A DNA stretch of 64,000 nucleotides from NCBI GenBank assembly GCA_009103225.1, contig RHPI01000773.1, positions 517,990-581,989 of the forward strand. The letters run 5' to 3'. The notes beneath the pieces were generated by a model. It worked only from the letters and a program-made list of their open reading frames with translations. It was not told the origin of the DNA and ran no database searches. The number at the start of each line of letters is the position of its first letter. The stretch's first letter is position 1. This DNA is from Chlorokybus atmophyticus (lineage: Eukaryota > Plantae > Mesostigma and Chlorokybus algae). The translations under genes were made by a program, and so were the position numbers. Shown in pieces: positions 29,912 through 64,000 of this stretch.

Positions 29912-29943
<32 letters not shown>

Positions 29944-34750: not shown

Positions 34751-35664
34751 CTTTACCCAAAAACAATGAGAGCTCCCACTACGTAAAGTGCTTAAGCTCT
34801 GTACTATGGTGTCATGCGCGAGCATGTAGTGTCATGTGCATGGTGCCCTCGGGGCTGGCGGCATGGATGGACCTTGGGATTTCGGCTCTCGTAGCCATTT
34901 TGTAGGGTTTATGTGTTGGGTTTGTTGGGAACTCATGTTTGGGTCCTCATGGACGTGAGGGAGGTGTGTTCGAGGCGTATCCATAGTCAAATACCGAGCT
35001 GACAGCATATTTGAGTCATTATAGTATCCCGCGCAGCTGTTTTGGAGTTGTGACTTTGAGAAGCCATAACTTACAGTTGGAGTGGCGGTTTGGCCGTGGG
35101 TTGGCGTCAAAAGATGCGTCTTGAAGTGTACTTGAAGAGGATAGGCTTGGATAAGCCTCTGCTAACCGTCTGCCGTTACATATCAACGCCATCATGACTG
35201 TTACTATGCTGGTGCAGACTGACAGTTAGGGTAGTTGGAGAGTTGGTTGGGCTTGGGCTCAACGGTGGTATATAAGGCTTTGCTAGCTTGTTTCCTAGTT
35301 TGGTTGGATGCAAGTTGGCCTACTGGAGTGCAAGCAACACCTTTGGGAAGAGGTTCTTGGCTGAGCGGATGCTTGTGCACATGCTTGCATGTATGGTGTG
35401 TGCACGTGTTCGTTGCTGTGCATGAAGGGGTGTGTGTCACTGCTGCGACTTTGATGCACCGTATGGGCTGCCTTAGCATGTACATTGAGTGAGGATTGAG
35501 TTTGGACTGCTCTACACGAGTGAACGGCTGATTGCAAGTCAAGTTGTGGTCATCTTGCCTACCTTTTGCAAGGGGACACGTATTTTTAACTTGCATCCAA
35601 CCGGTCGGCATCGGCGTCGGCGTCGAGTTCTCTCACTCAGCTTGGAGACAAGCTAGAGGAAGGT

Positions 35665-36180
35665 GTGGGGAGTGTAGGAGGGATGTTGGCAAAGCTTCCC
35701 GCCACTCGGCCGGCCTTGAGAGAGAAGATATCGTCAATTGTGGCGATGGTGGACAACCGAGGGGGGCACATCAGCCTGGATGGCTTCGTGCCGGATGTTG
35801 TCTTGGTGGATACAGGTGCCCAACCTGTCATTTTGGGTGCTAGAGCTGTCACAGGGATGGGACTCAGCCCCAAGGAGTGGGAGCCATGCCCGGTCATGAT
35901 CAATACCTCGGCGGGAACCGTAGAGGCCGTGTGCGGCATAATGGTGCAGCCGGTGGACATATGCTTTACTGCGTTGGGAGGTGCTACCACGACCTTCAAG
36001 GTTCGATGCCTCATCACGGATGCGAAGGGGTATGATGTGCTGCTCGGACAAGACTTCTTGTTCCCCGTCGGCGGCGGCGTTGACAATTGGATCGAACAAG
36101 GGTTCTTTCGGCCGCGTTGGCGTGTGGGAGGAGGTGAGAAGGCCTACTTTCCGTTGAGCATCACGCAAGGGGGTGTATAA
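35665..36180 (+). pseudogene. Element A aspartic protease
   Basis: VVLVDTGAQPVILG; in frame with the DNMT ORF across a single TAA. Confidence 0.85.
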
Positions 36181-36216
36181 AGGTCTCCAACATCCGCATC
36201 TGCTGTTTGGGCGTGC

Positions 36217-37500
36217 TTGAGTCGCCGTTCAGTCAAGGGATGGCTTGGTGACAGCACCGACTTGTACTACGACCATGTGGAGGAGGAGGAGAGTGTCTCC
36301 ACGCACAAGGAGGAGGGGAGACCTCCGAAGCTGGTCTATATGGCTCAAACTCAGTCGCAAGAGCTGGAAATGGCTGCACAACACCGTGCTCAGCGGCAAC
36401 AAGAGGCTCGAGACAAGGTTAGCCAAGCATGGATGAAGGATGTGATGGCATTGGAGCCGCCGTTGCTGCTCAAGGGTGTGAGAGTTGTTCATCCGCCTAT
36501 CAACTACAACACCATCGAGTGGAAGGTGCCCGAGGATGGTGTCGTGATGGTGGAGCTGTTTGGTGGCATTGCAAGTGGGCTTGCGGCCGCGTTGAATGCC
36601 GGCATCAAGGTGCGGCGCTACGTCTATGTAGACCCTTCGCCAATGGCACAACAAGGTGCACAACATCATGTGAGGATTTTGTTGAAGAAGTATCCAGATC
36701 TGCTACATGAGGGTGCGGTGAAGGGCTTTCAAAGCACATGGCCGCAAGACATTTGCTTGGTGGGGCCACATCATCTCGCGGCAATCGGCCATGTGGATTT
36801 GCTGGTAGCGGGGTGGGAATGCCAAGGGCATTCACGGGCTGGTCATGGCAAGGGATTGATGGATACACGCTCGTCATTGTTTTGGGAGTTGGTGCGCGTC
36901 ATCAACATGATTCAGCAAGGCCAAGAGCAGCTCATGGCGTACATCATTAAAAACGTACCAGCTGAAGACGACAAGCGCAAGCGCGTGCGAGAGGACTATC
37001 TGTTGGTGAGAAATGTTTTAGGCCATGAGCTGGTCATAGATGCGGTACGGCATGGTTCGCGCGCGCATCGGCTGCGTGTGAAGTGGACAAACCTCGCGCC
37101 TATTGAGGTACTTCGCACGGTGCAGCAAGAGTATAAAAGACCGCAAGGTTTGACAGTCAACCAGGTGCTGGAGCATGGGCGCACAGCACAACAGGTCAGC
37201 AAGGCTGATCGGCCGCCTCAGGAGGTGGTGAACCAGGTTGGGCACGACATGGCGGCGTTGTCGACATTGGTAACATACCCAGGCTCTTATGCATTCCGCA
37301 AGGGAGGGCCAGGGCTGGTGTGGGACTCGCGAAACTGCAGGTTGGAAGAGCCAACACCGGTGAGCGCGAGCGTGCGATGGGGTTTTTTTCCGGTGCCACA
37401 GCGGCGCCAGGGCTGAGTGATCAACAGCGCCGAGTGCTGCTAGGACAAGCCATGGACCAAAATAGCATGGTGTGGCTTATGGTTGTCTGCTTTGGCGGCA
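36217..37500 (+). pseudogene. Element A cytosine-5 DNA methyltransferase domain within pol
   Basis: VELFGGIASG (motif I), LLVAGWECQGHS (motif IV), YIIKNV (motif VI, E>K), RAHRLR (motif VIII), LGQAMDQNSM (motif X, after a frameshift). Confidence 0.88.
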
Positions 37501-37700
37501 CAAGAGTTGGTGGCAAGCATCATGCCGATGTGACAGCAAGCGCGTCGGGAGCCTGCGCCTCTGTCGAGGGGGTGGGAGCATGATGTACAGCATGAGGAGA
37601 GTAAGGGGGTGTCTTTTTCACCTGTGACAGCTGCAAGTGGCAAGAAAGCGGCTGTGGATGGTGCCTTGAAGCAGGAGAAGGCCACCGACCAGACCATGGA

Positions 37701-38830
37701 GTGGTGTATAGATCATTGAATGAGAAGACCAAGACTGATCGGTACCCTATGCCTATCCCTGAGGCCATTTTTGATGACATCGGTGGTGCAAAGGTGTTCT
37801 CCATTGTGGACTTGAGGCAGGGTTTTAACCAGATAGCCATCAAGCCAGAGGACCGTGGCAAGACAGCGTTTTGGGGAGTGGATCAGCTCTACCAATGGAA
37901 GGTCATGCCGTTCGGCTTGAAGAATGCACCTGTGAAGTTTCAGCGTGTGATGGACCGTGTGCTTCGTGGTCTACCCTATGCACGGTGCTACATCGATGAC
38001 ATATTGGTGTTTAGCCACACGATGGAGGAGCATCTTGTACACTTGGAGCGCGTGTTCAAGCGCGTGCGCGAGAGCGGCATGAGGTGTCACCCGGAGAAGT
38101 GCTTGTTCGGAGCTGATCACATCCCTTATCTCGGCCATGAGATAGTGCCGGATGGCGTCCGTGTGCAGCAAGCAGCAAAGGTGGATGCATTGGTGCAAGT
38201 GCCTGCACCGACAGACATTAGCTGACTACGGGCGTTTCTCGGCTTGGCGAACTACTATTGGAGGTTCGTGGAGGGGTATAGCAAGATTGCAAAGCCCTTG
38301 AATGAGTTGTTGAAGAAGGACAAGGCCTGGTGCTGGTCGGAGGAGTGCCAACATGCCTTTGAGCTTCTCAAGGAGAAGCTATGCACCGCGCCGGTGTTGA
38401 GACGGGCGGACTACAACCGTCCCTTCATCCTACACACAGATTGGAGCCGGTTGGGCATTGGGCCGTGTTGTGTCAACATGACGACAACGGGAAGGAGTAC
38501 GTGGTCGCATACGGCAGCCGAAGCAACAACAACGCTGAGGCGAACTACAGCTCCTACGAGGGGGAGTGTTTGGCAGTAGTTTGGGCCATCGTTCACTTCA
38601 GACCGTTCCTCTATGGCCGTCCCTTCACACTTATCACCGACCATCAGCCCTTGAAGTGGTCGATGACCAATGACAAGCTCACAGGGAAGCATGCCAGGTG
38701 GGCGTTTATACTGCAGGAGTATGATTTTGAAATTGAACCCCGAGCTGGTGTTGACAACATGGACACGGATGGGCTGAGTAGGAACCCAAACCCTTCATTG
38801 TTGGATGAGAGTGAGGCGAGGCATGACTAT
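37701..38830 (+). pseudogene. Element A reverse transcriptase and RNase H
   Basis: [51 protein letters not shown]; stops and a frameshift. Confidence 0.9.
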
Positions 38831-39029
38831 GGCAAGCCCGTGGCTGGGTTTTTGGCCTACCGTGTGGCCTCTTTGCTGGTGTTGGCGGGTCGGTGGAAGC
38901 ATGCGCATCCACGCGCGCAAACGCAGCTGGAGAGAGCGACAACGATGGTGCGATGCCGCCTTTGGAGGCTGCACCAGCCCCAACGGTCAATGACATTGAA
39001 GGGGAGGAAGCCGAGGCTTCAAAGAACAT

Positions 39030-39722
39030 TTGGAGGGATGAGCAAGTGCTTGCTCACCTCAAGACCGGGCTGTATCAAGCTGGTTGCAGCACAGCGACGG
39101 GAGATCGCGTGTGGCAACGCGCGCAACGCTATCGGTGGGAGGGAGACCACCTTGTGCGCTTGATGCCGGATGGTGGTGTGAGGATTGTGCCTCAACCACA
39201 TAAGAGGAAGCCGCTTGTGTAGGTGCATCATGAGAAGATGGGCCACTTTGGTGTCAAGAGGACACTTGGGCTTGTGCAATCAGCATATTAGTGGGCTGGC
39301 ATGCAATCTACCGTGGCGGGAGTTGTTGCAAGTTGTGTGGAGTGCGATAGGGTGAAGGCAAGCTTCAATACCAAGCACCCACAGCTGCACCCTCTGCCTA
39401 TCGAAGGACTATTCTATTGGTGGAGCCTAGATCTGGCCGGAGATCTACCAGTCAGCAAGAGAGGCAACCGCTATGTGCTCGTGATGATAGAGCACTTTTC
39501 AAAGTAGGTCGAGGTCGTGGCGCTGCCATCGAAGGAAAGCAAGCTTGTAGCTGAAGCTTGCATTGACCAAGTACTGAGCAGATTCGGTGCTTGTGCTGAG
39601 GTTCTCACTGACCAAGGCACCGAGTTTCGTGGCCAGTTTGATGACTTGTTGGCGCAAGCCTTCATCGACCATCGAAGGACTTCCCGTGACCATCCTCAAG
39701 CCGATGGGCTTGCTAAGAGAAT
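39030..39722 (+). pseudogene. Element A integrase, N-terminal part (HHCC and first DDE residues)
   Basis: HEKMGHFG...CVECDR, WSLDLAG, VLTDQGTEF, HPQADGLAKR; cut by element B. Confidence 0.88.
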
Positions 39723-39963
39723 TGTCGGGTCGAGGGGAGTCGAGGGTCACGCTGTCTCGGACAGTTGCATGGACAGCTATGCTTGCTGGACATGCTGCTG
39801 CGTTACCTGCGTTACGTGCCGCAAAAGCAAAAGATGACCCCAACCCTCATGGTGACAAGTGCTTTGTGCAGCTGGTCTGCTGCTGCTAGGTAGTACGGGC
39901 TGGTGGAGTCGGTGTTCTCCCTAGTGTACATGCTGTGCTGTAGCATACAAAGTCAACAAGCCA
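39723..39963 (-). repeat. Element B repeat B2 (right terminus)
   Basis: ~91% identical to B1. Confidence 0.9.
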
Positions 39964-40532
39964 CTACTATAGGTAATGCTGTTTACACAGTTCTTTGCAT
40001 GAGTGGAAGAGAAATTACACTGTTAAGTGAGGTGAATGAGCAACACGTGGATGCTATGCCCTGACTAATACCAACAAGCACACCGCGACCAAGTACACAA
40101 AGCTCACAGCAAAGACAAGCACAGTGCACGAGAACATGCACAGGCTCTTACACGGTGAGGGGATTCATGGGAACCGGGACGGTGTGTTTCGTAGTTCAAG
40201 TCGCTTTACAAGCTCTTAGCTTTCTCACTTACAGTGTCACCAGCTGATCCGGTAAACACTGTGCCTACTTATACAAGTCAACTCAAGACTGTCCAGAACA
40301 TAAGCTAACGGTCATATCGAGGCTACTTCCACAGAAAATCCGCACTCGATATAGAACCCAACTTATAACTGAACTCACAACTGAACAGCTACGCGCGGTG
40401 CCTATGTAGGCTATGGTCATGAGCTACTTTATAGACACGACCTAGCTACTGGTCAGAGACGCGCGCGGGTTGTCATGCTGGTAAGCCGGGTGAGGGTCTT
40501 GCTGTAGGCATGCCCGGACGATGGGCCTGACA
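39953..40532 (-). repeat. Element B repeat A2
   Basis: Direct repeat of A1 with about 20 substitutions and two indels (18 bp and 4 bp). Confidence 0.9.
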
Positions 40533-40534
40533 GC

Positions 40535-40775
40535 TGTCGGGTCGAGGGGAGTCGAGGGTCACGCTTTCGGACAGCTGCATGGACAGCCATGCTGTGCTGG
40601 ACATGCTGCTGCGCCACCTGCGTAACGCGCAGCAAAAACAGAAAGATGACCTCAACCCTGAAGGTGACAAGTGCTTCGTGCAGCTGGTGTGCTGCTGCTG
40701 GGTAGTACGGGGAGGTGGAGTCGGTGTTCTCCCTAGTGTACATGCTGTGCTGTAGCACACAAAGTCAACAAGCCA
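40535..40775 (-). repeat. Element B repeat B1 (directly after the PPT)
   Basis: Direct repeat of B2; starts TGGCTTGTTGA and ends CCCGACA. Confidence 0.9.
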
Positions 40776-40820
40776 CCCCCCCTGGGCTCTGGGGGAGGTT
40801 CTAGCTCCAGAGCTCAGCTG

Positions 40821-43800
40821 CTAGCGCAAGTGAGGAGGGCCGTTGGTACGGCAATCGTCGCACCAATATTCCTCCATAGGTATCGTATCCAAAGGTGGCT
40901 CCAGGCAGTAGCAATGCAGGCCCTTGTTGCAGCCATCGCAGAGCATCATGAGTGCGTCGTCGTCGGCGCTGCCACAGCATTCACATCGTGTGCTGCGCGA
41001 GGGACGAGGGTGTTGGATACGCCCGAAGCCGGCTACGTAAGGATGGTGACATGGCGCACAGTTCACCATGTTGTCCTTCAACCTCTCTCCGTTTTTACCA
41101 AGGAGGTCCAGCACCCCTGTGGGGTACACTTTGAGTACCTTGTAGACGGTGCGGCCTACGGAGGTGTCAAGCGTGTCTTTGGTGGCTGCCATGCAATAGG
41201 CACAGTCCCCCGCTTGGAACCGCCGCTGGCGCTCCTTGTAGAAGCCGCTGCGTACGCGCTCGTAGCGCAGCGTGTCGCGATGCTGCTCGATGTGCAGGTT
41301 GTTGAAGGCCATGGGGACAGTGCGCTCGAAAAGCGCTGCGCGCGTGGTGATGTCGTGGTGCATCCAGTCCGGGTCGTCGAGGTTGTTCACGACGCGATCC
41401 ACCTCCTGCTGCGCACGGAAGGGGAGCAATGGTGGTCGCCCGAACAGCAGGTAGTACGGGCTGTACTCCCGCAGAGCCGCCTGCTTCGACAATCGATATC
41501 CAAGGGCCACCCACGGGAGGTGGTCATCCCAAGTGTTCTTCTCGTACTCCAGCACGTATTGGCGGAGTGCCTTCTTGATGGTCTGTACTGTACGCTCGGC
41601 GAGGCCGTCGGCTTGAGGGTGATCACGCGAGGTACGGCGGTGGTCGATGAAACATTTGTCCAAGAGGGTGTCGAATTCCCCTCTGAACTCAGTACCTTGG
41701 TCAGTGATGACCTCGGCGCAGCTGCCAAATCGGCTGAGAACGCGAGAGAGGAAGGCTTGAGACACCCCCCTACTGCTCTTGTCGGGTAATGGTACCAGCT
41801 CCACCCATTTGGAGAAGTGCTCGATCATGACCAGGATGTACCGGTTGCCACACGCTGAGGGTGCCAAGTCCCCCAAAATGTCGAGTCCCCATCGGTAAAA
41901 GAGACCGGAGATGGGGAGTGGGTGCAAGGTGGCGCTACGCGTGTTGAGGCTGGCGCGCACCATGTCACACTGCTGGCAGTGGCTGACGAACCCCTGCACC
42001 TGTTTTGTTAACCCATACCACCAATATTGTGCCCGCACTAGGCTGACTGTACGCTTGACACCGAAGTTCCCAAGCTCAGTGTGGAGGGAAGTGATGTTGC
42101 CCTCTCGCGTGACCGGTGTCGGCACTTCATTGTCTTTGTCGTGGAAGCGGCGATACAGCTTGTCACCTGCCCATCGATAGTGACGGGTGCGTTGGGTGAC
42201 TCGGTCCTTCTCTCGAGCGTTCATGCCGGAGGGAAGCTGGCCCCTTTGCAGAAAGGAGAGTGATGGCTTGTCCTGCCATATGTCCTGCCTGGTGTGAGTG
42301 GGCGCCAGCTCTGTGTTATCGACGTCACTGTCGGCTGCGTGGGCGTCTCCCAAAGGTGTGGTTGTAGCAGGGTCGGTAGGCTCAAGGGCAGGAATTTCCT
42401 CTGCCACTGCTGAGGCCATGGTGTTGGTCTTGCGCCCCGAGCGCAACGCGGCAGCAGCAAACATTGCTGTCATGGTGGGGGCTGTTGCTGCAGGGACGAG
42501 CTCATGACGAGCTCTAGTTGCATCATTGGTGCTGAGGTGAGGGTTGCGACTGAGGCCATCGGCGTCTTGGTTGGTGAGGCCAGCGCGGTGGTCGATCTCG
42601 AAGTCGTATTCCTGCAACAGCAGGGCCCATCGAGCAAGTTTCCCTGTCAGATGTTGGTTGGTCATCAGCCACTTGAGGGGCTGATGATCGGTGATCAGTT
42701 GGAACTGTCAACCAAGGTGGAAAGGTCGAAAGAAGGAGATGGCCCACACTGCAGCGAGGCACTCCCCTTCGCAGCTGCTGTAGTTGGCCTCGGCGCTGTT
42801 GTTGCTGCGGCTGGCGTATGACACCACCCGCTCCTTCTTGTTCTCATCGTGCTGCACCAGCACCGCTCCCATCCCCAGCTTGCTCCAATCGGTGTGAAAG
42901 ATGAAGGGCTTGGCGTAGTCCGGACGTTGAAGGATGGGAGCGCTGGTGAGCCTGCTCTTCAGCTCCTCGAAGGCCTGCTGTTGCGGCTCCTTCCACGCGA
43001 ACTCCACCTCCTTCTTCAGTAGCTCGTTGAGGGGCCTTGCAATCTTCGCGAAGTCCTTCACGAACCGGCGATAGTAGTTGGCAAGTCCCAAGAAAGCGTG
43101 CAGACGTGTGAGGTCTGTCGGGGCAGGGATAGCTGCCAGAGCCTCTACTTTTGCCTGCTGCATATACACACCATGGGGCACAATCATGTGCCCTAAGTAC
43201 GGCACCTTGTGGGTGAAGAAGGTACACTTGTCGGGGTGTACGGTCATCCCCACTCCCTTGAGTCGTTCCAGCACCGCTTCGATGTGCTGAAGATGCTCCT
43301 CGTTGCTGCGGCTGAAAATGAGGATGTCATCGATGTAGCACCGCGTGCAGTCTAGCCCCTTCAAGGCCTTGTCCATGACGCGTTGAAAATTGGCGGGGGC
43401 ATTCTTTAGCCCGAACGGCATTACCTTCCATTGGTACAACTGTCCGTGGCCCCAGAAGGAGGTCTTGTGCTTGTTCTCGTCCTTGATGGCGATTTGGTTG
43501 TACCCTTGACGCATGTCCAGGATGCTGAAGACGGTGCAGTCTCCCACATCATCGAAAATACCCTCTGCTGTAGGCATGGGGTACCTGTCTTGCTTGGTCT
43601 TGTTGTTGAGGGGGCGATAGTCGCCACACATGCGTCGCTCTGTCCAGTTGCCTGCTGAATCCTTATTCAGTGGCATGACGGTTGCTGCTGCAAAGTCCGA
43701 TGTGGACTCTTTGATAAGGCCTGCATCAAGCAGCGCCTTACATCTCTGTTCCACCAAGTCCTCTTCCAACTTGGAGAGCCTGTATTGTCGTCGGAACACC

Positions 43801-45929
43801 GGCTCAGTGTCCACCAGCTCGATGTCCATCTGGTACACGGAGCATGTACCTAATTCCTTCACATTAAAGCTGAATTGGCTCCTCCATTTGTTGAGGAGAG
43901 CCTCCAGCTTCTCTCGAGTGTCTTCTGTGGCCAACGGGCCAATGGCATGGTCCCAGGAGGTTGCATTGGCAACCACGGGAATGTCCTCCACTGTCACTGC
44001 TGCTTGCTCCTTCATTTGGACCACCTCGAGGGCTGTGTGAGCTGCCTTGGTGTCGGTTACGCGATCAGCCCACCCCCCAGCCAAGTGTTCGAGATCCTCG
44101 AAGGACACGTGGCGGTCCTGCAATGCGAAGCTCAGCTCTAGCAGCCATGCCATGCTGTTCTGGTCCATGGCGCGACCAAGCAGCTGGCATTGCTGACTAT
44201 CTGTCAGCGATGAGCCCGTGATGCTGTTGGGGAAGAATCCCATGGCGCGTTCACATTCGCGTGCGTTGGGTTCTTCCAGCCTGTTGGTGGTCGCATCGAA
44301 CACCATCCCGTCACCACCGTTCCGAAATGCGTAGGAGCTCGGGTAGGACACCAATGTGGGGAGTGCGCGACGGGGCTGACCGGGCTGAATGCACGGGTAG
44401 AAGTGGTTGTGGTCATGACGCAGAACAGGTTGTGCTGTGCGGCCGGGGTCAAGGATGTCATCGACCAGCAGGTTGCGCGGCCGAGCGCTGCGTGTGTATT
44501 CGGCGGTCATGAGTTCCTCCACGGTGGCCAAGCCTGTCCATTTGGCACGTACACGATGTGCGCGCGAGCCATGTCGTGCTGCGTTCACCTTGAGTGGGTG
44601 CCCCAGAATGGAGCAAACTTGTCGGTAGCTGGAGGCCACGTGCGGACGCTTGTCGTCCTCTGAATGCACATTTTCGATGACGTACCCCAGGGGTCTGGAG
44701 ATTTGATGGTGTTGAAGGAGGTGGATGATTCTCATCAGCTCCCAGAACAGCCCGGAGCGAGGGTTTTCGAGGCCTTGCCCCTTGCTTGCCCTGGAGTGCC
44801 CTTGGCATTCCCATCCAGCTATTAACAGGTCGACGTTGCCGAGGGATAGTAGGTGATCTTCAGTGATCAGCCAGATGTCCTGTGGCAATGCTTTGAGGCT
44901 GCCTTGCAGCGCCGAGAGGGGTAGTTGACGTGGATACCTTGCGTGCAGTTGGCGTAAGTGGTGCTTGAGGACCGTTTGCGCGTGTGGGTCTGGGTCGCAG
45001 TAATAGTATTTGACAACCTTCACGCCCGTGTTGAAGACCGCAGCAAGACCGCTGCCAATGCCTCCAAATAGCTCTAACACTGTGATGCCCTGTTGCCTGC
45101 GAAAGGTGTGGAACTCCACCACTCCGGTGGCCACCATATGGTGGTCCTGCACCTTGATGTGGCTTCGGTAGTTGGGGAAGCGCGTGGTGATCAGTGGATG
45201 GCTGAGCAAGACGTGCGCATCCACCTGTGCGCGCCAGCGCCGTTCAGCTGGGTCTTGTAATGCTACTTCCACGGTGGCATCCTCCTGCTCCTCGTTGTAC
45301 GGGGTGGGAGAGGAGTCGACGGTTCGACACGGGGCCGTGGCACCAGCAGCGACTTGCGTCCGAGCGCCGTCGTATGTGGCCATTGCAGCCTCCCGGGTGC
45401 GGGCGTGGCTGCGTGTGGCCACGGCAGCCACTTGACGTTGGGCGCGCGTGCGCGAGACCAACTCGAGAGGCAGGAAACCCTGCACCTCTCCGTCATCCTC
45501 ATCCCAATGTGGCCGAAACCACGCTCGCTCTGTCAAGCAGTCGAGGCCCATGCCCACAGGGAAGTTGAAGTCCTGCTCAAGCAGAAAGCCGAAGGAGCCG
45601 GCATTGGTGACCACACATTGTTGGACGATCTCGGTCGTGTGGGTTGGGTCCAGCCCTGTCAACCGAATGCAAAAGGCCTCCCTGGTGACTCCCATCACCT
45701 TATCTCGGCTACCTGTAGCAGTGTCCAACACGTACGGGCAAGGCACCAAGTCGGAGCTGTTTATCCCGAGGGACCGCGCGAGGAAGCGCCCGATGATGAC
45801 AGGCTGTGCTCCGGTGTCCAACATTACTCGCTTGGGTGCCAGGCCGTTGATGGTAACAAGCTTGCCTTGGTTGGCCACCATGGCAGCATTGGCGTCGATA
45901 CGCAGCCTCTTCATACGAGTTGTCTGCAC
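40821..45929 (-). pseudogene. Element B pol: protease, C5 DNA methyltransferase, RT, RNase H, integrase, PHD finger (single in-frame TGA at ~42708)
   Basis: MLDTGAQP; VLELFGGIGSG, LLIAGWECQGHS, YVIENV, RAHRVR, LGRAMDQNSM; YIDD; FHTDWS; LHTELGNFG...CQQC, WGLDILG, ITDQGTEF, GLAER; CECCGSADDDALMMLCDGCNKGLHCYCLEPP...WCDDC. Confidence 0.95.
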
Positions 45930-45959
45930 CTCTGACTCAGTTCTCTCAGCTGGGGGTGC

Positions 45960-48444
45960 TTAGCGCATGGCAGCCAGAGCTCCTCTGCCTACTGGGTCCG
46001 GAGAACCCCCGCCTTGCCCTCTCCCTCTGCCGAACCGATCGGCACTGGTTGTGGTGGCGGCGCAGGTGGATGCCGCCTCTGCGAAAATGGAATCCTGCTC
46101 GCGGGTGTACCCAATGGCTGTGGAGGAAACCCCGGTGGACCCGGTGTTTGTGGGCCTGCCTCGCGTTCAGCTCGCTCCGCGGCGTACGTCCAGCGGACAG
46201 CATGAGCCGCCTCTCAGACCAACGTCCCTTCCCACGTGGCCGTGGGCTCGGTGTCCGTGTCGGTCCAATGATGATATTGAGGCATGGGCTGCAGGTATAC
46301 GCCGCGTAGTAGCTGTCGCCGCATGTCGTGAGTGATGGTGGGGACTCGCAAGATCCCTGCCATGTAGGCATCCCACCTTCCTTGTACCACTCCCACATCG
46401 AGCACGGTCATGGCGCGCGCGCGTAGGGTGCGCTGGAGGTTAGTCTGAAGGGGTGCAACTCATGAGCAATGGCGATGCGCCGCCGTTGGCGTGCGGCTTC
46501 CAATCCTGGCAGCCGCAGCATTGCCTCTTGCATTCCCTCCAGCGTGTCCGGGGCTGTGGTGGCAGCCTCGTCGTAGGCTTGTCGCAGCGAGCGAACGAAT
46601 GCCTCCAACCATGATGCTCGGTTGCCAAAGGCAAACAGGGGGACAGCAGGGTGATTGCAACGAGCCATGTCACGAGACGGGCTAGAGCGGCGCTGCCCTC
46701 TTGCATCCCCATCATCTGTCTTAATGTGTTGCCCTCAGGCCTGTGCAACATGACTGCTTGCCGGATGAGTGCGGTACGGAGTTGTTGCTCCCCCACCATA
46801 CCAGCTCCTCCTCGTTGTGTAATGTCCCCTTGCGGGGTGAGGTACCCTCGCCCTGCATCGCGTTGATCCTCAGGCATGTCTTCGACCAAAGGAGGCAGCA
46901 GGGGGGCGATTACCCCCCTCAATTGTTGCGCCAACGCCTTCGCTTGGTCTGCAACAGTTGCTTGCCTTGGCTGTTCGATGGCGACTGCTGTGGAGTAGGT
47001 TGTGGTCAGCGCCGTGGAGGCGCTGGCAACATTTGCCGGCATTACGGGTGGTACGCTAACGGCGTGTGCTGCTTCGTACGCCTGTCGGCGCGCGTCCACT
47101 TGGGCAGCTTGGTCCACTTGATAACGATGGGCTTGTTCGAGAGCAGAGAAACGCTGTTGACAACTGCCTGGAGTGAGCCCCCGGAGCGCGGGATCAGCGC
47201 CTAGCGCGATGTCTGACATGGTGACCACGAGGTCTTGTATTTTGTAGCGCTGGAGTCCGAGTGGGTCCAGTGGCGTGGGCTCGAAGTCGATCTGTTGAGC
47301 GGGCATGGGTTGCCGCGGGTGACTGGGTGCGCCCTGTAATCGTGCGTGTAATGCCAAGAACAATTGAATGGCCAGCTCCAACACTGCAGGTCGCCGGTAG
47401 GTGACCCCGAAGAGACGATCCCTCATCTCTGGTGCAGTGCCGGCGAGGATTTCATCCTCCAGCTGCTGTTGTGTGGGTTCCGGCAGCGTGTGGTATTCTG
47501 GAGGTGGTAGGGGCAAGATGCCATCATCGCGTGCCACGCGCGTGGTGCGTTGCCCCCCTGATCCGTACGCAATGGTGGTGGGCTCCACGTTGCGTATAAC
47601 CGACGCCCAGGCGCGTTCTGCTTGTGGTCCGCGTGGCACCTGCTGTGTGACGTCAAGTGCTGGTGGCGGTGCCATTCGAATCTCAGAAAGTGGTGCAGTG
47701 GGTGCAGCAGCACTACTGGAGGCGATGATGGTGGCACCTGCAGCAGTTGTTGTCACTGAGGTGGCGGCCGTGAGGGTGGCAGCAGTTGTGACCGCTGTGG
47801 TCGCGCCAATAGAAGCAGGAGTGGTGGATTCACCACCCACGAACCCAATGCCCATGGTTGTTGCGGCGTGGGTGCTTTCCATCACCGGGGACAGCGTGGT
47901 GCCAAAAGTGTTGGCACCTGCTGTTGTGGTCGGTGTGGACGCCGACGGTGTCGTCGACGGCGTCGTCCCAGCAATGGTTGTGGCTGCTGAGGCAGCACCA
48001 CTTGTGGCGTCCGACGATGCCGATGTTGACGACGCGCCAGTTTCCCTGCGCGCACGTCTTGATGGTTGTACGCGTGACGGCGTGCGAGTGTCCGTATCCC
48101 GTTTTTGTGCCATCAGTGCCCACCTAGCAGCATAGCAGGCTTGATAGTCCTGCTCCTTGTTCTCCTTCAGCTGTGCCACGCGCGCCATCAGGGCTGCCAC
48201 ATGGTCAATAGCTGGTGGATTGGTTGGTGCCTTTACAGCAGCAGCTCCAGCGCGAGGACGTCCCTCCGGTCCTTTGTGCTGTGGGGGGCGGTTTTTCCCT
48301 CTGTAGCCAGCTTCTTCCTTGCGAGCCCCAGCGTTGTTGTTGTTGTTGGGGTTGTGGCCACCAGCGTTGTTGCCGTTGTTGCGACCACCAGCGTTGTTGC
48401 TGTTGTTATAGCCGCCAGCGTGGTTGCTGTTGTTGTAGCCCCCG

Positions 48445-48476
<32 letters not shown>

Positions 48477-49946
48477 GCCGCGGTAGCCAATAGCGTTGCC
48501 GTTGTTGTAGCCAATAGAGGGCCGCAGCTCAGGGAACTTGAGCCAGCATACTGCCTCCAAGTGTCCCGTCTTGTGGCAGTAGTCGCACACAAGGTTGCCG
48601 TAATCTTCGGTGCACTCCTTTTGGTAGTGGCCATGTCGACCACACCGGTGGCACAGCACTGGAGCCACAAGGGCAGCATGAGCTAACCGTTTATCCTTGT
48701 GGTGGATGCCTTGCGGCTCTCAGCTGCGGTCCCGCCGAAGAGGCTCTGCACTTGTGCCTGCCATAGGCCGCGAGGCACTGCGGTTGATGTCCAGCACCGC
48801 TTTCTCATACAATGCACGCTTATGGATGGCTTGTGCAGTCTCGAAAGCTTCCTTGAGGGTGTAGCCGAGGGGCCTGCTGTAGTTCAGCGTCAGGCGCGTT
48901 GACTCACTCAGGGTGGGATCCAACTCGGCCACATACACCACTGCTGCCGCCTCCTCACTGACAATCTTGTAGTCAGTGTCTTTGAGCAACCCTTCCAACC
49001 GTGAATACAGTCGGAGAGGGTCCTCGTGGGGCTTCCGTCGAAAACGCCTCAACTCCTCCACCTTGCTGTTGGTTTGAGGTGGGAAGGTGCGCAGGAGTGC
49101 GGCGTAGAGGTCCTTCAACGGGGAGTCCGACATGGCCACGCCCACCGTAAGCGCGGGTGCACGCAATGCCACTGAACCGAGGGTGAAAACACTGCCTCCC
49201 GCTGGAGCACGCGAGTTCGGTGTTGGTAGCAGTAGCGTACCCATCTCCAACGCTGCAGCTTGCTGCTCCTCTTGTTGCTCCCTGATGATGGCAGCGGTGC
49301 GGTTGAGTATTCTGATCCGGCGTTCGGCCTTCTTGCTTTCGATCTCTGCAGGAGTCCATGAGGCCACTACCACCTCAACTTCTTCATTCTCTGCCTTCTC
49401 CATGGCTGCAGCTAGAGTGACACCCGTGACTGAGGCTGGCGGGGCCGCTGCTACAGGGACAGTAACCGATGGGCTATGCAGTGACGTGGAGGCTATTGTG
49501 CTGGCCAACTCGCCATAGCCATCAATCTTGTGCAACACAGCGACGGACTTTCACACATCATGCGCTTCGTGATCAAGGTATTGGGCGGACACATGAAACG
49601 ATACCTTATCTGTCCAGTCCTTGCTCTTGAGGGCTTGCTGCCACATCTTGGAGTGGAACTTGATGATGAACTCGTCAAGTGAGGTGGTGCCAGGGCGTCC
49701 GGAGAAGCGTAGGGAGTTGGTTGAACTGGAAGGCTCCATCTCTTCGTCGTCACTGTCCGACGGTAGTGGAGATGCTCGTTGGCGAGGAGTGGAGTGAGAG
49801 GAGGTGAAGCCGGAGACGGGGCGTGAGCCTCTGCTGCTACGGTAATCGCTCCCTTCACTTGCGCGCTCGTAGGTAAGGTTGGAGGTTGGGCTCCAGCTGT
49901 TGAGGTCCCCTTCTTCTATTGGCGAGAAAGGGGTGGGCCTGCTCAT
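45960..49946 (-). pseudogene. Element B very long gag-like ORF (two zinc knuckles; Asn-rich and Thr/Ala-rich tracts)
   Basis: ORFs 49551..49946, 48720..49538 and 46440..48668 are one frame split by two TGA codons; CHRCGRHGHYQKEC and CDYCHKTGHLEAVC; 3' end frameshifted and uncertain. Confidence 0.7.
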
Positions 49947-50157
49947 ACAGCTGATGCGATGGTGAAAGTGGATGAAGGGTAGAGTGTTTGTGCTCTACAA
50001 TGGGATCTCCAGTGCTGCTATCACCCAACACACTAGCGCTTGTGCGCGCTACGCGATGACGGTGACAACACTGCACTGTGATGTGTACAACTACAGATTG
50101 CGATTCTGATGTACAGCCTGCAACTACACTCACCTGAGCAAAGAGGGACACTGTAAA

Positions 50158-50760
50158 TCAACAAGCCACTACTATAGGTAGTGCTGTTTACACAGTTCTT
50201 TGCATGAGTGGAAGAGGAATTACACTGTTAAGTGAGGTGAATGAGCAAGCAACACGTGGATGCTATGCCCTGACTGATACCAACAAGCACACGGCGACCA
50301 AGTACACAAAGCTCACAGCAAAGACAAGCACAGTGCACGAGAACATGCACAGGCTCTCACACAGTGAGGGGATTCCTGGGAACCGGGACGGTGTGATTCG
50401 TAGTTCAAGTCGCTTCACAAGCTCTTAGATTTCTCACTTACAGTGTCACCAGCTGATCCGGTGAACACTGTGCCTACTTATACAAGTCAACTCATGACTG
50501 TCCAGAACATAAGCTAACGGTCATATCGAGGCCATTTCCACAGGAAATCCGCACTCGATATAGAACCCAACTTATAACTGAACTCACAACTGAACAGCTA
50601 CGCGCGGTGCCTATGTAGGCTATGGTCATGAGCTACTCTAGAGACACAACCTAGCTACTGGTCAGAGACGCGCGCGGGTTGTCATGCTGGTAAGCCGGGC
50701 GAGGGTCTTGCTGTAGGCAAGCCCGATGACGACTGGCATGCCCGGACGATGGGCATGACA
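50158..50760 (-). repeat. Element B repeat A1 (contains a TATA box and the putative TSS)
   Basis: ~96% identical to 39953-40532; TATAAGTA at 50482-50475. Confidence 0.9.
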
Positions 50761-51520
50761 GAATGGTACAGGTGGTGAAGAAGGGGATTCGCAAGTACTA
50801 TCTCAACCACAACAAGAGAGATTGGGACTTGGCGTTGCCATGGCTGGCGATGGGCTATCGCATGACGCGGCAGGCTGCGTTGAGCTCCTATACAGCCCCT
50901 ACTTTTTATTGTATGGGAGAGAGCCCATACTGCCAACATCAATCCGGAGACAGGTTGAGCAGGAGCTTGACTTGGAGGATCCCACTGTGTGGGAGAAGGA
51001 GATGGCGAAGCGTGCGGAGCTGTTTCGGCGTGTGATGCCAATCGCACTTGGCAACTTGCAAGTGGCGCAACACCGCGACACGTTGCGCTATGCTAGGGTG
51101 AGGAGTGGCTTCTATAAGCCAAGACGGCAGAAGTTTCAGCCAGGTGACTTTGTGTACCTGCAGAGAAAGACCAAGGACACGCTGGATACGAGTGCGAGTC
51201 GCACCATCCTTCGTGTGCAGAAGCTCCTCAACAACGGTGTGTTGTTGTTGGAGGGAGCTGATGCCTGGACCACCAAGGAGCACATGAAGAGCTGCGCTCC
51301 TTGCCATCTGCCAAACGTGGATGACAGTGTGGATCCGGCCCTGGCAATACCAGATGTGGGTCACCGTTGTGAACAGTGTGGCCGAGCAGAGGGCTGGGAC
51401 ACCATGCTTCTATGCGACAGGTGTGTTGCCGGTTGGCACATTGAGTGCCTTCGTCCACCACTTGAGGAGATCCCTGATGGAGCATGGTACTGTCCAGAGT
51501 GTACGAGGACTACGCGATGA
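50761..51520 (+). pseudogene. Element A integrase C-terminus plus PHD finger
   Basis: Resumes (R)MVQVVKKGIRKY after the GAAT TSD; CEQCGRAEGWDTMLLCDRCVAGWHIECLRPPLEEIPDGAWYCPEC. Confidence 0.9.
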
Positions 51521-53748
51521 GCGTGTGAGTCAGCTGAAGGCGCACGAGGGTGTTGGCGCTCAGCTGCAGGGGGTAGTGACACGCATCTTTCACTATGTGT
51601 GTCTACCATGTGATGAGAGGCAGTGCATGAGATAGCATGACATGGTCTCATGGTGTACAATAGCATACGGACATGCATGACAAGGTGGTTTACGACGAGT
51701 TCAAGCCACGATGAGGGAAGGCACGACAATGGACTCTACAAGGGACGAGCGCGCTTTAGATTTGGGACCCCTAGTGCTACAGGAACAACACTGCTCTTAA
51801 ATAGATAGTCAACCGAAAAGCCAACTTTGGATGTGTGGAGTTGGCAAATGGGCGGTGCTATGAGATCTTTAACCAAATGATGGACCACAACAGCATGACA
51901 TGGCTTATTAATGTCGCCATCACGTTGTAAAATTACCATCATGATGTCACGGCGACAGCATGTTGACTAGACGGTAGAATAGAGAAAGACAACGACGAGG
52001 TAGTCATAGCTGTGAGAGATTAAAATTTGATTCAGCCATCTGTAGACTCTAATTAGCTTAATCAGCCATGATAATTAATATGCTTACTCAAACTGTTTAA
52101 AGGTGTTATGTTGTGTGTCTAAATGTAGAAAGCTTGCATATCAACATGTTATACGCCCACAAACGCGGCAGTATTGAGCTGGTACGGGCATTTAACGAAG
52201 CATTTACTTTGATAGTGGTTTTTTTCAATATGTGCCGTTTCTTGTAAGACTATGGAGGTGTGCGCGCCTGCAGCTGCGTTTAATGGTCTGAACCGGGCTT
52301 GTTTTAAGTAAGGAGGTTGCTATAAGGGCCAGCAATGACAAGGTAGTAATTGAGCCGCTTAGAGATGACACTACAACACTTGGAGCATTTGCATGAGGTG
52401 GCCGGTGATTCGAGCACGATAGCTTATGGGAGTTTTTGGACAAAAAGGAGGCAGAACCTCCATGTATAGGCTGGAGCTTTATTTGACACAGAACTCCACA
52501 ACTTGTTTTAAAAGCACTTGCACTTATTGGTTCAAAGGCGAAGGATTTCTATTCGGTAACTTTGAATGCTTGCTCTGCGGCTATAAAGGCCTTAAAGAAG
52601 TTATCTGATTCCTTCCAAAAACAATGCCAAGCATATGCACTGTGTCTAGCTTAAGCGCGAGTTGAACACTTTGCGAAAAGAGCGCAATGAATTAGGCAAT
52701 TTGTACCTAGCGTGAACAAGAGAGCTTGAGAACTTAACTCAAGTGCTTGTTTACGTTGTGCATGTGGCTTTTGTGAATATATTATGCAGTAGATGGGCAA
52801 GTGCTATACACATAAGTGCATGCACACCACTTACATATGCCGCCTTTTAGGCCTACATGTGTACGGCCTGCGTGTTGATTTGCGCATGTGCACACGTGAT
52901 GCCTTTTACACACATTCAGTCTCACAGACAATTAGGCTTGTTTGCATACTAGGTAAGGCGTGCGGGCATTTAAGCATGCTCATGTGCAAGCACATGAGCC
53001 TACATACGCATGGAGCCTTCTACGCGAGTTGAGCCCCAAAGGGTGCAGGCGTGTTGCATGCCATCTAGGCGTGCTGAGCGTTTCGACGCAGTGTTCGCTT
53101 TGTGTAAGCATACTTTGTACCGGTATTCCCTTGTGGCCTAGCCCAGTGGCTTGTTAATTTAATCATCATGCGAACATGTGATCATCCAAGATAATTCTCG
53201 ATAGGGCAAGCCGTGTATCACTAATACGCATGCACGTGAAAACTCCACGGATTTCAGGATCAGTACTGGTCCATGCATTAGCTATGCGACGCTGATTGGT
53301 TGAGACCAGCGATGGTCCGTGCAAGAAGCTCAACATTAACCAATTAACACTAGGTTAGCAATTATACTCTTAAGTACTTTTACTCTATTAAATATTGGAA
53401 ATTGGGATTTTGAAGCCATTAGTTTGTGCAAAACCACTACGCTTTGTGCAACATGGCGTACATATATTAATGGAAGCACAATATGAAGGGCTTTATTTTA
53501 AAATTAAAGGCTTTGATGCTATATCGAGGCACGCGCGGTTGACACGATGTGTACATGTGCAAATTGCGTACAATTCCTGTTGCTATTGCAGAAGAACATA
53601 CTGTGTTGGTGGATAGCAATGTGGCTACTGAGGATGTTACTTCAATATCTGTTGTGAGAATGCTACATCAACACGTGGCTGCGCATGTCGCTGTGCGCAC
53701 AGCTTAGCACCACAGCCAATTGAGCAGCATGTTGCTCATGTTTCTTAG

Positions 53749-59089: not shown

Positions 59090-59292
59090 CTTCGGTTCGT
59101 CGCTTCTGTGTGCCCGCGGAGGACTAGGCGCTCACAACCCAGAAAATGTTTTAGCTTGTGTACGCGTGCGCTGCCGCCGCAACCAGCGACGTGGTAGTTG
59201 GCACCGTCAAAGCCAGCGAGGACGGAGAAGGCGAAGGCGGAGGAACTGAGTGCCGACATGCAACGCAGGTTGGGAACGCTCACTCTCACACA

Positions 59293-59340
<48 letters not shown>

Positions 59341-59572: not shown

Positions 59573-59661
<89 letters not shown>

Positions 59662-61900: not shown

Positions 61901-61954
61901 CACGCACCATGTGCAATCTTGAATATGTTGCTGAGTGTGCATGCGTGTACACAC

Positions 61955-63920: not shown

Positions 63921-64000
63921 ATGGCGCCTGCAGTGCGTGCCGTTCACGGCACAAGCAGTCAACTTCTTCGGCGCAGACGGCACAACCAGGCTGTGCCGTC

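What the first reader, a model, noticed from the sequence alone, without database searches (positions are those of the whole stretch)
39723..50760. Gypsy retrotransposon with split direct repeats (A1-internal-B1-A2-B2) instead of LTRs
Seen: element B encodes a normal Gypsy DDE integrase and has TGTC...GACA ends and a 4-bp TSD (GAAT). Its left end carries only repeat A (50760-50158), while the right end reads PPT, B1 (40775-40535), GC, A2 (40532-39953), B2 (39963-39723). Element C has a completely different B sequence but the same PPT-B1-GC-A2-B2 layout, so this is not a one-off rearrangement. Established: A...BAB split direct repeats are the hallmark of tyrosine-recombinase retrotransposons (PAT, Ngaro, TOC/kangaroo), which do not make DDE-type TSDs. 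Inference: this is a DDE-integrase retrotransposon group that has converged on the split-repeat architecture. I know of no description of this, and standard LTR finders would mis-annotate it.
Basis: partly seen in the sequence, partly recalled or inferred. Interest (0 to 1): 0.95.

Follow-up and report, generated by a model that had tools for sequence, protein, structure and literature searches.

The report
Gypsy retrotransposon with permuted terminal repeats
An 11-kb Gypsy-type retrotransposon of the green alga Chlorokybus has the repeat order A–genes–B-A-B instead of two identical end repeats, although it inserts with an ordinary integrase; the oddity is real, is shared by relatives in other algae and in liverworts, and was noted once in print in 2018 but never explained.

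Summary
Element B (39723-50760, minus strand) reads A1 – PBS – gag/pol – PPT – B1 – GC – A2 – B2. It has TGTC…GACA ends and a 4-bp GAAT duplication, which I verified because the element splits the integrase ORF of another element. Element C has the same 3' layout.

The window is from Chlorokybus. I found the same architecture in Klebsormidium, Closterium (three loci) and two liverworts: eight B-A-B 3' ends, four of them in complete copies that each have a 4-bp duplication. All these elements fall on one side of a 100/100 RT-tree branch. They encode PR–C5-DNA-methylase–RT–RNaseH–DDE integrase–PHD.

The B1|A2 joint is a conserved palindrome, (CAC)GACA-GC-TGTC(AC), which equals the two element ends abutted. 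B always starts right after the polypurine tract. A always ends right before a Tf1-type self-primer site.

My reading is that the reverse-transcription LTR is B+A and that the integrase site lies inside it. Integrated copies would then be a U5|U3-joined (2-LTR-type) intermediate opened at one palindrome. This mechanism is inferred, not shown.

The architecture is not undescribed: de Mendoza et al. 2018 (Fig. 4c legend) noted it for KnitGypsy-Dnmt3. So this is a new member of a barely characterised known kind.

The parts
39719..39722 (.). Target-site duplication GAAT, copy next to the 3' end of element B
   Evidence: The host integrase ORF is continuous once element B and one GAAT are removed.
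39723..39964 (-). B2, the terminal repeat at the 3' end of element B. It ends ...CCCGACA at 39723. Its first 11 nt (TGGCTTGTTGA, 39963-39953) are shared with the end of A2.
   Evidence: 91.4% to B1 over 244 nt.
39953..40532 (-). A2, an internal full copy of A. It starts TGTCAGGCC at 40532.
   Evidence: 95.2% to A1 over 583 nt.
40529..40538 (.). Perfect 10-bp palindrome GACA-GC-TGTC at the B1|A2 joint. It equals the 3' end of the element, then GC, then the 5' end. Proposed integrase (att) site.
   Evidence: the only exact copy in the window. The same core occurs in all seven related elements.
40535..40775 (-). B1. It starts directly after the polypurine tract and ends ...CCCGACA.
40776..40790 (-). 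Polypurine-type tract (AGAGCCCAGGGGGGG) abutting B1
   Evidence: A G-run sits 0-3 nt before B1 in 8 of 8 related elements.
40821..42665 (-). Integrase ORF: HHCC zinc domain, DDE core (rve) and a C-terminal PHD finger
   Evidence: In one search it aligns to the Ty3 and PFV integrases, with D, D and E present in the alignment.
42708..45929 (-). Pol ORF: aspartic protease, C5 DNA methyltransferase, RT, RNase H. It is in the same frame as the integrase ORF and is separated from it by one in-frame stop.
46440..49538 (-). Two gag-like ORFs (46440-48668 and 48720-49538). Asn-rich low complexity, a weak CCHC knuckle, and no Pfam family above threshold.
50147..50156 (-). Putative self-primer binding site TTACAGTGTC, one nt after the end of A1
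   Evidence: Shuffle test: 18 of 2000 shuffles reach 10 nt.
50438..50447 (-). GACACTGTAA inside A1, the reverse complement of the PBS. Putative first bases of the transcript. TATAAG lies at 50477-50482, about 30 nt upstream.
   Evidence: Analogous perfect matches of 12-15 nt occur in H, L006, L008 and L011.
50158..50760 (-). A1, the only repeat at the 5' end. It starts TGTCATGCC at 50760.
50761..50764 (.). Target-site duplication GAAT, copy next to the 5' end of element B
61955..64000 (-). Element C, 3' part only: integrase/PHD (from 63163 up to the window edge), PPT 63116-63125, B1 63115-62863, GC, A2 62860-62209, B2 62208-61955
34810..51728 (+). Host element H, a related DNMT-Gypsy interrupted by element B. 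It is flanked by ATGG|TGTCATGC...CACGACA|ATGG. A 34810-35587, self-primer 35302-35316, PBS 35588-35602, pol from ~35665 (no gag), PPT ~51566-51573, a single B 51574-51728, and no A2-B2.

Best explanation
Element B belongs to an old streptophyte lineage of Ty3/Gypsy retrotransposons (PR–DNMT–RT–RNaseH–DDE integrase–PHD). In this lineage the long terminal repeat made by reverse transcription is B+A. U3 starts at B, right after the polypurine tract. Transcription starts inside A. U5 ends at the end of A, right before a Tf1-type self-primer PBS.

The sequence the integrase recognises is not at the ends of that LTR. It is a palindrome in its middle, (CAC)GACA-GC-TGTC(AC), at the B|A joint.

A new copy would therefore not come from trimming the two cDNA ends. 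It would come from an intermediate in which the U5 end (A) has been joined to the U3 start (B), giving two LTRs in tandem as in a 2-LTR circle. The integrase opens this with a staggered cut after each CA of the palindrome in the PBS-proximal LTR. That single cut yields both CA-3'OH ends with 2-nt 5' overhangs, which is the normal strand-transfer substrate. Insertion with a 4-bp duplication then gives A–PBS–genes–PPT–B·A–B.

This arrangement is replication-competent. The promoter in A1 drives an RNA that still contains a full B1 and the 5' part of A2.

Shown: the anatomy, the duplications, conservation of the palindrome, the PPT and PBS borders, and the clade. Inferred: the joined intermediate and the internal cleavage. 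Unknown: how the A|B joint is made, whether by ligation or by a plus-strand end-to-end jump.
For: 1. Eight independent elements have PPT–B–GC–A–B: window B and C, K. nitens L005, Closterium L006, L008 and L010, Calypogeia L011, Riccia L012. None has A-B-A at the 5' end or a B upstream of A1. That is 8 of 8, or 0.4% under a 50:50 choice of isomer.
2. Four complete copies each have a 4-bp target duplication placed exactly at TGTC…GACA: GAAT, ACTC, AAAT, GTCA. Element H adds a fifth, ATGG.
3. The B1|A2 joint is GACAGCTGTC in 7 of 8 elements, with one mismatch in C. It extends to CACGACAGCTGTCAC in Klebsormidium, one Closterium element and both liverworts, although B and A are otherwise unalignable between hosts.
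4. B1 begins 0-3 nt after a G-run in 8 of 8.
5. The bases right after A1 are the perfect reverse complement of a site inside A: 13 nt in L006, 14 nt in L008, 12 nt in L011, 15 nt in H and 10 nt in element B. A TATA-like box lies about 30 nt upstream of that site in the four checked (L006, L008, H, element B). This is the Tf1/Sushi self-priming signature (PMC6317226).
6. The A2|B2 joint is U5 end + U3 start. It has an 11-nt overlap in Chlorokybus, 0 nt in the liverworts, and 1-2 extra T in two of the three Closterium elements (none in the third). Tf1 RT is known to add untemplated bases to cDNA ends (PMC11042837).
7. There is biochemical precedent. PFV and HIV-1 integrases cleave the palindromic LTR-LTR junction of 2-LTR circles and produce processed ends (PMC1180852 and PMC1905944).
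8. All these elements lie on one side of a 100/100 branch in an RT-RNaseH tree.
Against: No extrachromosomal DNA, RNA ends or enzyme activity were examined, so the intermediate is inferred.

A symmetric 2-LTR circle carries two identical palindromes. It should therefore also yield the A-B-A…B isomer, which was never seen (0 of 8). Some directionality is unexplained. One possibility is that only the plus strand jumps from the U5 end onto the U3 start.

The self-primer match in element B itself is only 10 nt (18 of 2000 shuffles reach it).

Two elements, H and L009, have a single B at the 3' end. That is compatible with B1×B2 recombination, but also with direct use of both att sites on a linear cDNA.

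The sample is ten elements, not a genome-wide census.
Confidence: 0.6

Rival explanations
1. DIRS/PAT-like replication. The RNA lacks the outer parts of A1 and B2. The internal B1A2 joint serves as a template or splint that restores and joins the ends of a single-stranded cDNA into a circle. The DDE integrase replaces the tyrosine recombinase only for the last step.
For: The repeat order is identical to PAT, Ngaro and SymbioDIRS elements (PMC7192593 Fig. 1; PMC5890265). The B1|A2 joint is an exact internal copy of the abutted termini.
Against: The borders of B and A coincide with a PPT and a self-primer PBS. That is what ordinary two-jump LTR-type reverse transcription predicts, and it makes a B+A LTR without any splint. 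The RT-RNaseH is Ty3-like. No tyrosine recombinase is present.
Confidence: 0.15
2. A covalently closed 2-LTR circle made by host end-joining is cut at either palindrome at random. Only the A…B-A-B isomer can replicate, so lineages persist through it. The other isomer exists but was missed in this small sample.
For: This is the simplest use of known biology: 2-LTR circles and integrase cleavage of their junction.
Against: Every insertion, competent or not, should stay in the genome, yet 0 of 8 informative 3' ends and 0 of 4 complete copies show the other isomer. The 11-nt overlap at the joint in Chlorokybus and the precise joints in the liverworts look templated rather than like untidy end-joining.
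Confidence: 0.15
3. The true LTR is A alone. B2 is a secondary copy of the 3' untranslated segment B1, added after insertion or by read-through.
For: A1 and A2 are the longest repeats and flank the coding region like LTRs.
Against: The plus-strand primer would then have to lie at the end of B, which is not purine-rich, whereas a G-run abuts the start of B in 8 of 8. The target duplication flanks the end of B2, not the end of A2. The end of B carries the conserved integrase-end sequence.
Confidence: 0.04
4. Misassembly or a one-off rearrangement of the 39.7-40.8 kb region.
For: Short tandem-like repeats are a classic source of assembly errors.
Against: The same order, spacer and palindrome occur in a second family in the window and in six loci from five other assemblies. 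The duplication is verified through the interrupted host ORF.
Confidence: 0.01

Closest known systems
KnitGypsy-Dnmt3 of Klebsormidium nitens (de Mendoza et al. 2018, Nat Commun 9:1341; PMC5890265)
   Same: A Gypsy pol with an inserted C5 DNA methyltransferase, and repeats 'the same as that of a DIRS retrotransposon' (Fig. 4c legend). A K. nitens copy (L005) has the same PPT–B–GC–A–B 3' end and groups with the window elements in the RT tree.
   Different: The host differs (Chlorokybus), and protein identity to the K. nitens copies found is only about 40-50%. The paper gives no target duplications, no end sequences, no PBS/PPT analysis and no mechanism. It does not report the lineage outside Klebsormidium.
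PAT-like / Ngaro-like tyrosine-recombinase retrotransposons (DIRS order)
   Same: Split direct repeats A1–internal–B1A2B2, with an internal copy of the joined termini (PMC7192593).
   Different: Those elements encode a tyrosine recombinase and are thought to integrate a circle by site-specific recombination, which would leave no DDE-type target duplication (my own knowledge; no duplications are mentioned in PMC7192593). Here there is a DDE integrase, no recombinase, 4-bp duplications, TG…CA ends, a PPT and a self-primer PBS.
Tf1/Sushi/Tcn1 self-priming Ty3/Gypsy elements
   Same: The first 10-15 nt of the presumed transcript are complementary to the PBS next to U5 (PMC6317226). In Tf1 the cDNA ends carry PBS/PPT extensions and untemplated bases (PMC11042837). 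From my own knowledge, not from that paper, the integrase has to clip these.
   Different: Those elements have ordinary identical LTRs and usually a chromodomain. Here the repeats are permuted, the C-terminal module is a PHD finger, and a DNMT is inserted. Clade membership was not tested against named references.
Integrase cleavage of the palindromic LTR-LTR junction of retroviral 2-LTR circles (PFV, HIV-1)
   Same: A DDE integrase cuts a palindrome made of abutted element ends and produces 3'-processed ends (PMC1180852, PMC1905944).
   Different: In retroviruses the palindrome is the junction of the two cDNA ends, and cutting it merely restores the normal linear genome. Here the palindrome is inside the reverse-transcription LTR, only 2 bp separate CA and TG, and cutting would give a permuted genome.

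Membership tests
Ty3/Gypsy (Metaviridae) LTR retrotransposons | Pol domain order PR–RT–RNaseH–IN, with Ty3-like RT | tested here: met
   Pfam gives Asp_protease_2, RVT_1, RT_RNaseH_2, Integrase_H2C2 and rve in that order. The best solved relatives of the RT-RNaseH are Ty3 entries 4OL8 (3e-64) and 7Q5B.
Ty3/Gypsy (Metaviridae) LTR retrotransposons | DDE integrase making a short target-site duplication, with TG…CA element ends | tested here: met
   The D, D and E are aligned with the Ty3 and PFV integrases. Five elements have 4-bp duplications, and all ends read TGTC…GACA.
Ty3/Gypsy (Metaviridae) LTR retrotransposons | PBS next to the 5' repeat and PPT next to the 3' repeat | tested here: met
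   A G-run lies before B1 in 8 of 8. A self-primer PBS follows A1 in 5 of 5 elements that have a 5' end.
Ty3/Gypsy (Metaviridae) LTR retrotransposons | Two identical LTRs, one at each end | tested here: not met
   The 5' end carries A only and the 3' end carries B-A-B. No B lies upstream of A1 in any of the 4 complete copies.
DIRS order (PAT-like / Ngaro-like) | Split direct repeats A1…B1A2B2 | tested here: met
DIRS order (PAT-like / Ngaro-like) | Encodes a tyrosine recombinase and lacks a DDE integrase | tested here: not met
   No Phage_integrase hit in any sense-strand ORF, even at E ≤ 1 for the unassigned ORFs. A DDE integrase is present.
DIRS order (PAT-like / Ngaro-like) | Integration without a DDE-type target-site duplication | tested here: not met
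   A 4-bp duplication is verified through the interrupted host ORF and in three other complete copies.
KnitGypsy-Dnmt3-like elements (de Mendoza 2018) | C5 DNA methyltransferase domain inside Gypsy Pol | tested here: met
   PF00145 lies between PR and RT in element B and H and in L006, L008 and L011. The Dnmt3 subtype itself was not tested.
KnitGypsy-Dnmt3-like elements (de Mendoza 2018) | DIRS-like repeat arrangement together with Gypsy domains | tested here: met
KnitGypsy-Dnmt3-like elements (de Mendoza 2018) | Shares a clade with K. nitens copies | tested here: met
   In the RT-RNaseH tree the window elements, K. nitens L005, the Closterium elements and the liverwort elements lie on one side of a 100/100 branch. 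L005 is a long branch, so its exact place is unsure.
Tf1/Sushi-type self-priming elements | The 5' end of the transcript is complementary to the PBS | tested here: inconclusive
   Sequence complementarity is present (10-15 nt). Transcript starts and priming cannot be tested with these tools.
Tf1/Sushi-type self-priming elements | Phylogenetic placement within the Tf1/Sushi/Tcn1 clade; chromodomain | not tested
   No named reference sequences were available. The C-terminal module here is a PHD finger, not a chromodomain.

The most novel reading that the evidence does not exclude
This is a natural lineage of DDE-integrase retrotransposons that obligatorily integrate through a U5|U3-joined (2-LTR-type) intermediate, opened by restriction-like integrase cleavage of a palindrome lying inside the LTR. 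If so, the 'split direct repeat' architecture of DIRS, PAT and Ngaro elements and of these Gypsy elements is one general consequence of placing the integration site inside the reverse-transcription LTR, whatever enzyme does the joining. It would also make 2-LTR-type junctions a productive intermediate rather than a dead end. The lineage has persisted from Chlorokybus to liverworts.
Probability: 0.45. Interest if true: 0.8.

Novelty: new member of a known kind. Interest (0 to 1): 0.6.

Why it matters
Annotation. LTR finders expect two identical terminal repeats. They will mis-bound or miss these elements, mis-date them, and may call A–B units solo LTRs. This affects genome annotation of streptophyte algae and liverworts.

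Mechanism. A DDE integrase that must act on an internal palindrome, far from the cDNA ends, would be the first natural system in which a 2-LTR-type junction is required for transposition. It would also give a simple common logic for split direct repeats in tyrosine-recombinase retrotransposons.

Biology. The same lineage carries a DNA methyltransferase and a PHD finger, so it bears on how transposons interact with host chromatin. The liverwort copy has repeats that are 99-100% identical. This suggests the lineage is still active in land plants and offers material for experiments.

Tried and rejected
- tRNA primer. I first read TGGCTTGTTGA after A1 as a tRNA PBS. No support was found. The relatives have no TGG there and show perfect self-primer complementarity instead. 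I now read the 11-mer as the end of U5, which is also the start of U3.
- A+B as an ordinary TG…CA LTR. Rejected, because the coding region lies between A and B, not after B.
- Reverse-transcription schemes that would make B-A-B at the right end by mispriming at the 11-mer. On paper they all duplicate the left end instead.
- Metagenome contigs L001-L004. They stop just after the PPT or carry no repeats because assemblies break in repeats. Uninformative.
- L007 (Calypogeia). An integrase fragment in a nest of other repeats, not decoded.
- Repeats for host element H by BLAST and Smith-Waterman. None found. H was later resolved from its ends, duplication and self-primer.
- Organism from transposon proteins. 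Best identities were only 36-49%. A host cyclase exon gave the answer instead.
- The palindrome pattern alone is not rare at ≤1 mismatch in the window: 5 hits against 3.5 expected. Its weight comes from its position and its conservation across taxa.
- The direct repeats at 57799-58008 and 58639-58849 have no palindrome and no nearby integrase. I do not count them as part of this family.
Full report
**1. The observation**

Self-BLASTN of the window gives A2 39949-40524 = A1 50155-50736 (95.2% over 583 nt) and B2 39723-39964 = B1 40535-40776 (91.4% over 244 nt).

Read on the minus strand, the element is:
- flank ATTC | TGTCATGCC… (A1, from 50760)
- …CCTATAGTAG-TGGCTTGTTGA (end of A1, 50158)
- about 9.4 kb of coding sequence
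- a G-run polypurine tract (40776-40790)
- B1 (40775-40535, ending …CCCGACA)
- GC
- A2 (from 40532, TGTCAGGCC…)
- B2 (ending …CCCGACA at 39723) | ATTC

The B1|A2 joint is the perfect palindrome GACAGCTGTC, the only exact copy in the window. It equals the 3' end of the element, two bases, then its 5' end.

The sense strand encodes two gag-like ORFs, then protease – C5 DNA methyltransferase – RT – RNase H, then an HHCC/DDE integrase with a C-terminal PHD finger. Pol is one reading frame with a single in-frame stop. No tyrosine recombinase is present.

**2. The ends are real insertion ends**

Element B lies inside the integrase gene of another element of the same kind on the plus strand. Integrase residues 1-362 map to 38663-39732 and residues 357-605 to 50757-51502. 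The flanks read …GCTAAGAGAAT | element | GAATGGTACAGG…. Removing the element and one GAAT restores an open integrase frame. The 4-bp duplication and both boundaries are therefore verified, not just plausible.

**3. Element C**

Element C has PPT, B1 63115-62863, GC, A2 62860-62209 and B2 62208-61955, with joint GACG-GC-TGTC and B1/B2 at 90.2%. Its B is unrelated to that of element B. Only the last ~100 nt of A are similar. This is the usual pattern of a fast-evolving U3 and a conserved U5. Its 5' part is off the window.

**4. Source organism**

A host exon (24372-25358, minus strand; guanylate/adenylate cyclase) is 241/243 identical to a Chlorokybus atmophyticus protein in EukProt. The window is from Chlorokybus or a very close relative. 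Chlorokybus is an early-branching streptophyte alga.

**5. Relatives**

Protein searches found DNMT–RT–RNaseH–IN–PHD proteins in Klebsormidium, Closterium, liverworts and metagenomes. I fetched the genomic loci.

| Locus | Organism | Layout found | Joint | Duplication |
|---|---|---|---|---|
| L005 | K. nitens | PPT–B1–A2–B2; B1/B2 98%; 5' end cut by contig start | CACGACA-GC-TGTCAC | not checkable |
| L006 | Closterium NIES-65 | complete A1…B1-GC-A2-B2; A 97.5%, B 95.5% | CACGACA-GC-TGTCAC | ACTC |
| L008 | Closterium NIES-65 | complete; A 99.8%, B 98.4% | CCGACA-GC-TGTCAC | AAAT |
| L010 | Closterium Naga37s-1 | B-A-B 3' end | CCGACA-GC-TGTCAC | not checkable |
| L011 | Calypogeia fissa | complete; A 99.4%, B 100% | CACGACA-GC-TGTCAC | GTCA |
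| L012 | Riccia sorocarpa | B-A-B 3' end | CACGACA-GC-TGTCAC | not checkable |

Pfam confirms DNA_methylase and RVT_1 in L006, L008 and L011, RNase H also in L006 and L011, and rve plus PHD in L011.

In total, eight elements have the B-A-B 3' end. Four are complete and each has a 4-bp duplication. None has the mirror order A-B-A…B, and none has a B upstream of A1.

In an RT-RNaseH tree, all of these plus five metagenomic relatives lie on one side of a 100/100 branch against eight other Gypsy hits, with host-specific subclades.

**6. Where the repeat borders lie**

B1 always begins 0-3 nt after a G-run. That is where plus-strand synthesis starts in an LTR element.

The bases right after A1 are a perfect reverse complement of a site inside A:
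- 13 nt in L006 and 14 nt in L008
- 12 nt in L011
- 15 nt in host element H
- 10 nt in element B (18 of 2000 shuffles reach this)

In L006, L008, H and element B a TATA-like box lies about 30 nt upstream of that site; this was not checked for L011. This is the signature of Tf1/Sushi-type self-priming, in which the first bases of the RNA fold back on the PBS (PMC6317226).

It follows that transcription starts inside A, U5 ends at the end of A, and U3 starts at the start of B. The LTR that reverse transcription must produce is B+A. The A2|B2 joint is then a U5-end|U3-start joint, as in tandem LTRs or a 2-LTR circle. It shows an 11-nt overlap in both Chlorokybus elements, no extra bases in the liverworts, and one or two extra T in two of the three Closterium elements, with none in the third. 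Tf1 RT is known to add untemplated bases and to leave primer-derived extensions on its cDNA (PMC11042837).

**7. Mechanism (inferred)**

With a B+A LTR, ordinary reverse transcription gives BA–PBS–genes–PPT–BA. The integrated form A–PBS–genes–PPT–BA–B is exactly that molecule with its two ends joined (A|B) and reopened at the palindrome of the PBS-proximal LTR.

A staggered cut after each CA of GACA^GC·TGTC leaves two CA-3'OH ends with 2-nt 5' overhangs, which is the standard integrase substrate. PFV and HIV-1 integrases are known to cut the palindromic junction of 2-LTR circles in this way (PMC1180852, PMC1905944).

The arrangement is self-sustaining. An RNA from the promoter in A1 to a terminator in A2 contains U5, the genes, all of B and the 5' part of A.

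What I cannot explain with a symmetric circle is the absence of the other isomer (0 of 8; 0.4% under a 50:50 choice). A directional joint would give only the observed isomer. One candidate is the completed plus strand jumping from the U5 end onto the U3 start and copying B. The 11-nt U5/U3 overlap in Chlorokybus fits this. It remains conjecture.

**8. Single-B copies**

Host element H resolves as ATGG | TGTCATGC… …CACGACA | ATGG, spanning 34810-51728. GC content steps at both borders (0.39→0.50 and 0.55→0.43). A runs 34810-35587, the self-primer/PBS pair is present, pol starts about 60 nt after the PBS (no gag), and a PPT is followed by one B with no A2-B2.

L009 (Closterium NIES-54, same family as L008) also ends PPT–B…CCGACA followed by unrelated DNA.

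These A…B copies could arise from B1×B2 recombination, the analogue of solo-LTR formation. They could also come from an integrase using both internal sites of a linear cDNA. The data do not decide between these.

**9. Comparison with what is known**

The domain set and RT place the element in Ty3/Gypsy. It fails one defining feature of that group, identical LTRs at both ends.

It shares the repeat order of PAT/Ngaro elements (PMC7192593). It fails their defining features: it has no tyrosine recombinase, and it makes DDE-type duplications.

The combination was noted once. The legend of Fig. 4c in de Mendoza et al. 2018 says of KnitGypsy-Dnmt3 of K. nitens that the repeats are those of a DIRS element while the domains are those of Gypsy. 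Neither the text nor the supplement goes further. Full-text searches found no other description.

New here are:
- the Chlorokybus, Closterium and liverwort members
- the verified duplications
- the conserved palindrome
- the PPT and self-primer borders
- the permuted-LTR reading

**10. Verdict**

The finding is real, is not an artefact, and is a lineage trait. It is a new member of a known but barely characterised kind. The mechanism proposed is moderately likely and testable.

Noticed in passing
window 34810-51728 (+), interrupted by 39719-50760: Host element H is a related DNMT-Gypsy with a 4-bp duplication (ATGG), a 15-nt perfect self-primer/PBS pair (35302-35316 and 35588-35602), no gag between the PBS and the protease, and a single B at its 3' end (no A2-B2). 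It is the 'A…B' form.
   Followed up: yes
L009:6600-6900 (Closterium sp. NIES-54): A second single-B 3' end: PPT–B…CTCCGACA followed by unrelated DNA and a long tandem array with a ~14-bp register (6897-7874). The 5' end is cut by the contig end, so no duplication can be checked.
   Followed up: partly
window 39723-40776 versus 39949-50736: B1/B2 are more diverged (8.6%) than A1/A2 (4.8%) in the same element, although both pairs should have been identical at insertion. A1 also has about 20 extra nt near its start relative to A2.
   Followed up: no
window 27225-30040 (+) and 59198-61961 (-): An inverted pair of ~2.8-kb repeats (76-86% identical) with no similarity to Gypsy proteins. The second copy begins exactly at the 3' end of element C and contains a run of 138 N (59435-59572, an assembly gap).
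   Followed up: partly
window 1205-4656 and 19619-21175: Two halves of a Copia-type element in opposite orientation. One half is gag–IN–start of RT on the minus strand (1205-3745). The other is the end of RT on the plus strand (19619-20728). Each lies next to one arm of a 402-bp inverted repeat (4255-4656 and 20774-21175, 96%). This looks like an inversion or two truncated copies.
   Followed up: no
window 10000-17200 (+): A GC-rich block (60-64% GC) with a LINE-type ORF (endonuclease/exonuclease/phosphatase + RVT_1, 12760-15075) and long flanking ORFs that have no family match.
   Followed up: no
window 24372-25358 (-): An exon of a host adenylate/guanylate cyclase, 241/243 identical to a Chlorokybus atmophyticus protein. 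It identifies the source organism.
   Followed up: yes
window 57799-58008 and 58639-58849 (+): Direct repeats (82%, 840 bp apart) with internal sub-repeats. There is no palindromic joint and no nearby integrase. Nature unknown.
   Followed up: partly
window 48333-48511 (-): A GTT/AAC-rich imperfect tandem array inside the 742-aa gag-like ORF, giving an Asn-rich low-complexity stretch.
   Followed up: no
L011:3782-13708 (Calypogeia fissa): A liverwort member with 99.4-100% identical repeats and three long ORFs (1339, 797 and 248 aa), so it looks like a very recent insertion. The lineage may still be active in a land plant.
   Followed up: partly
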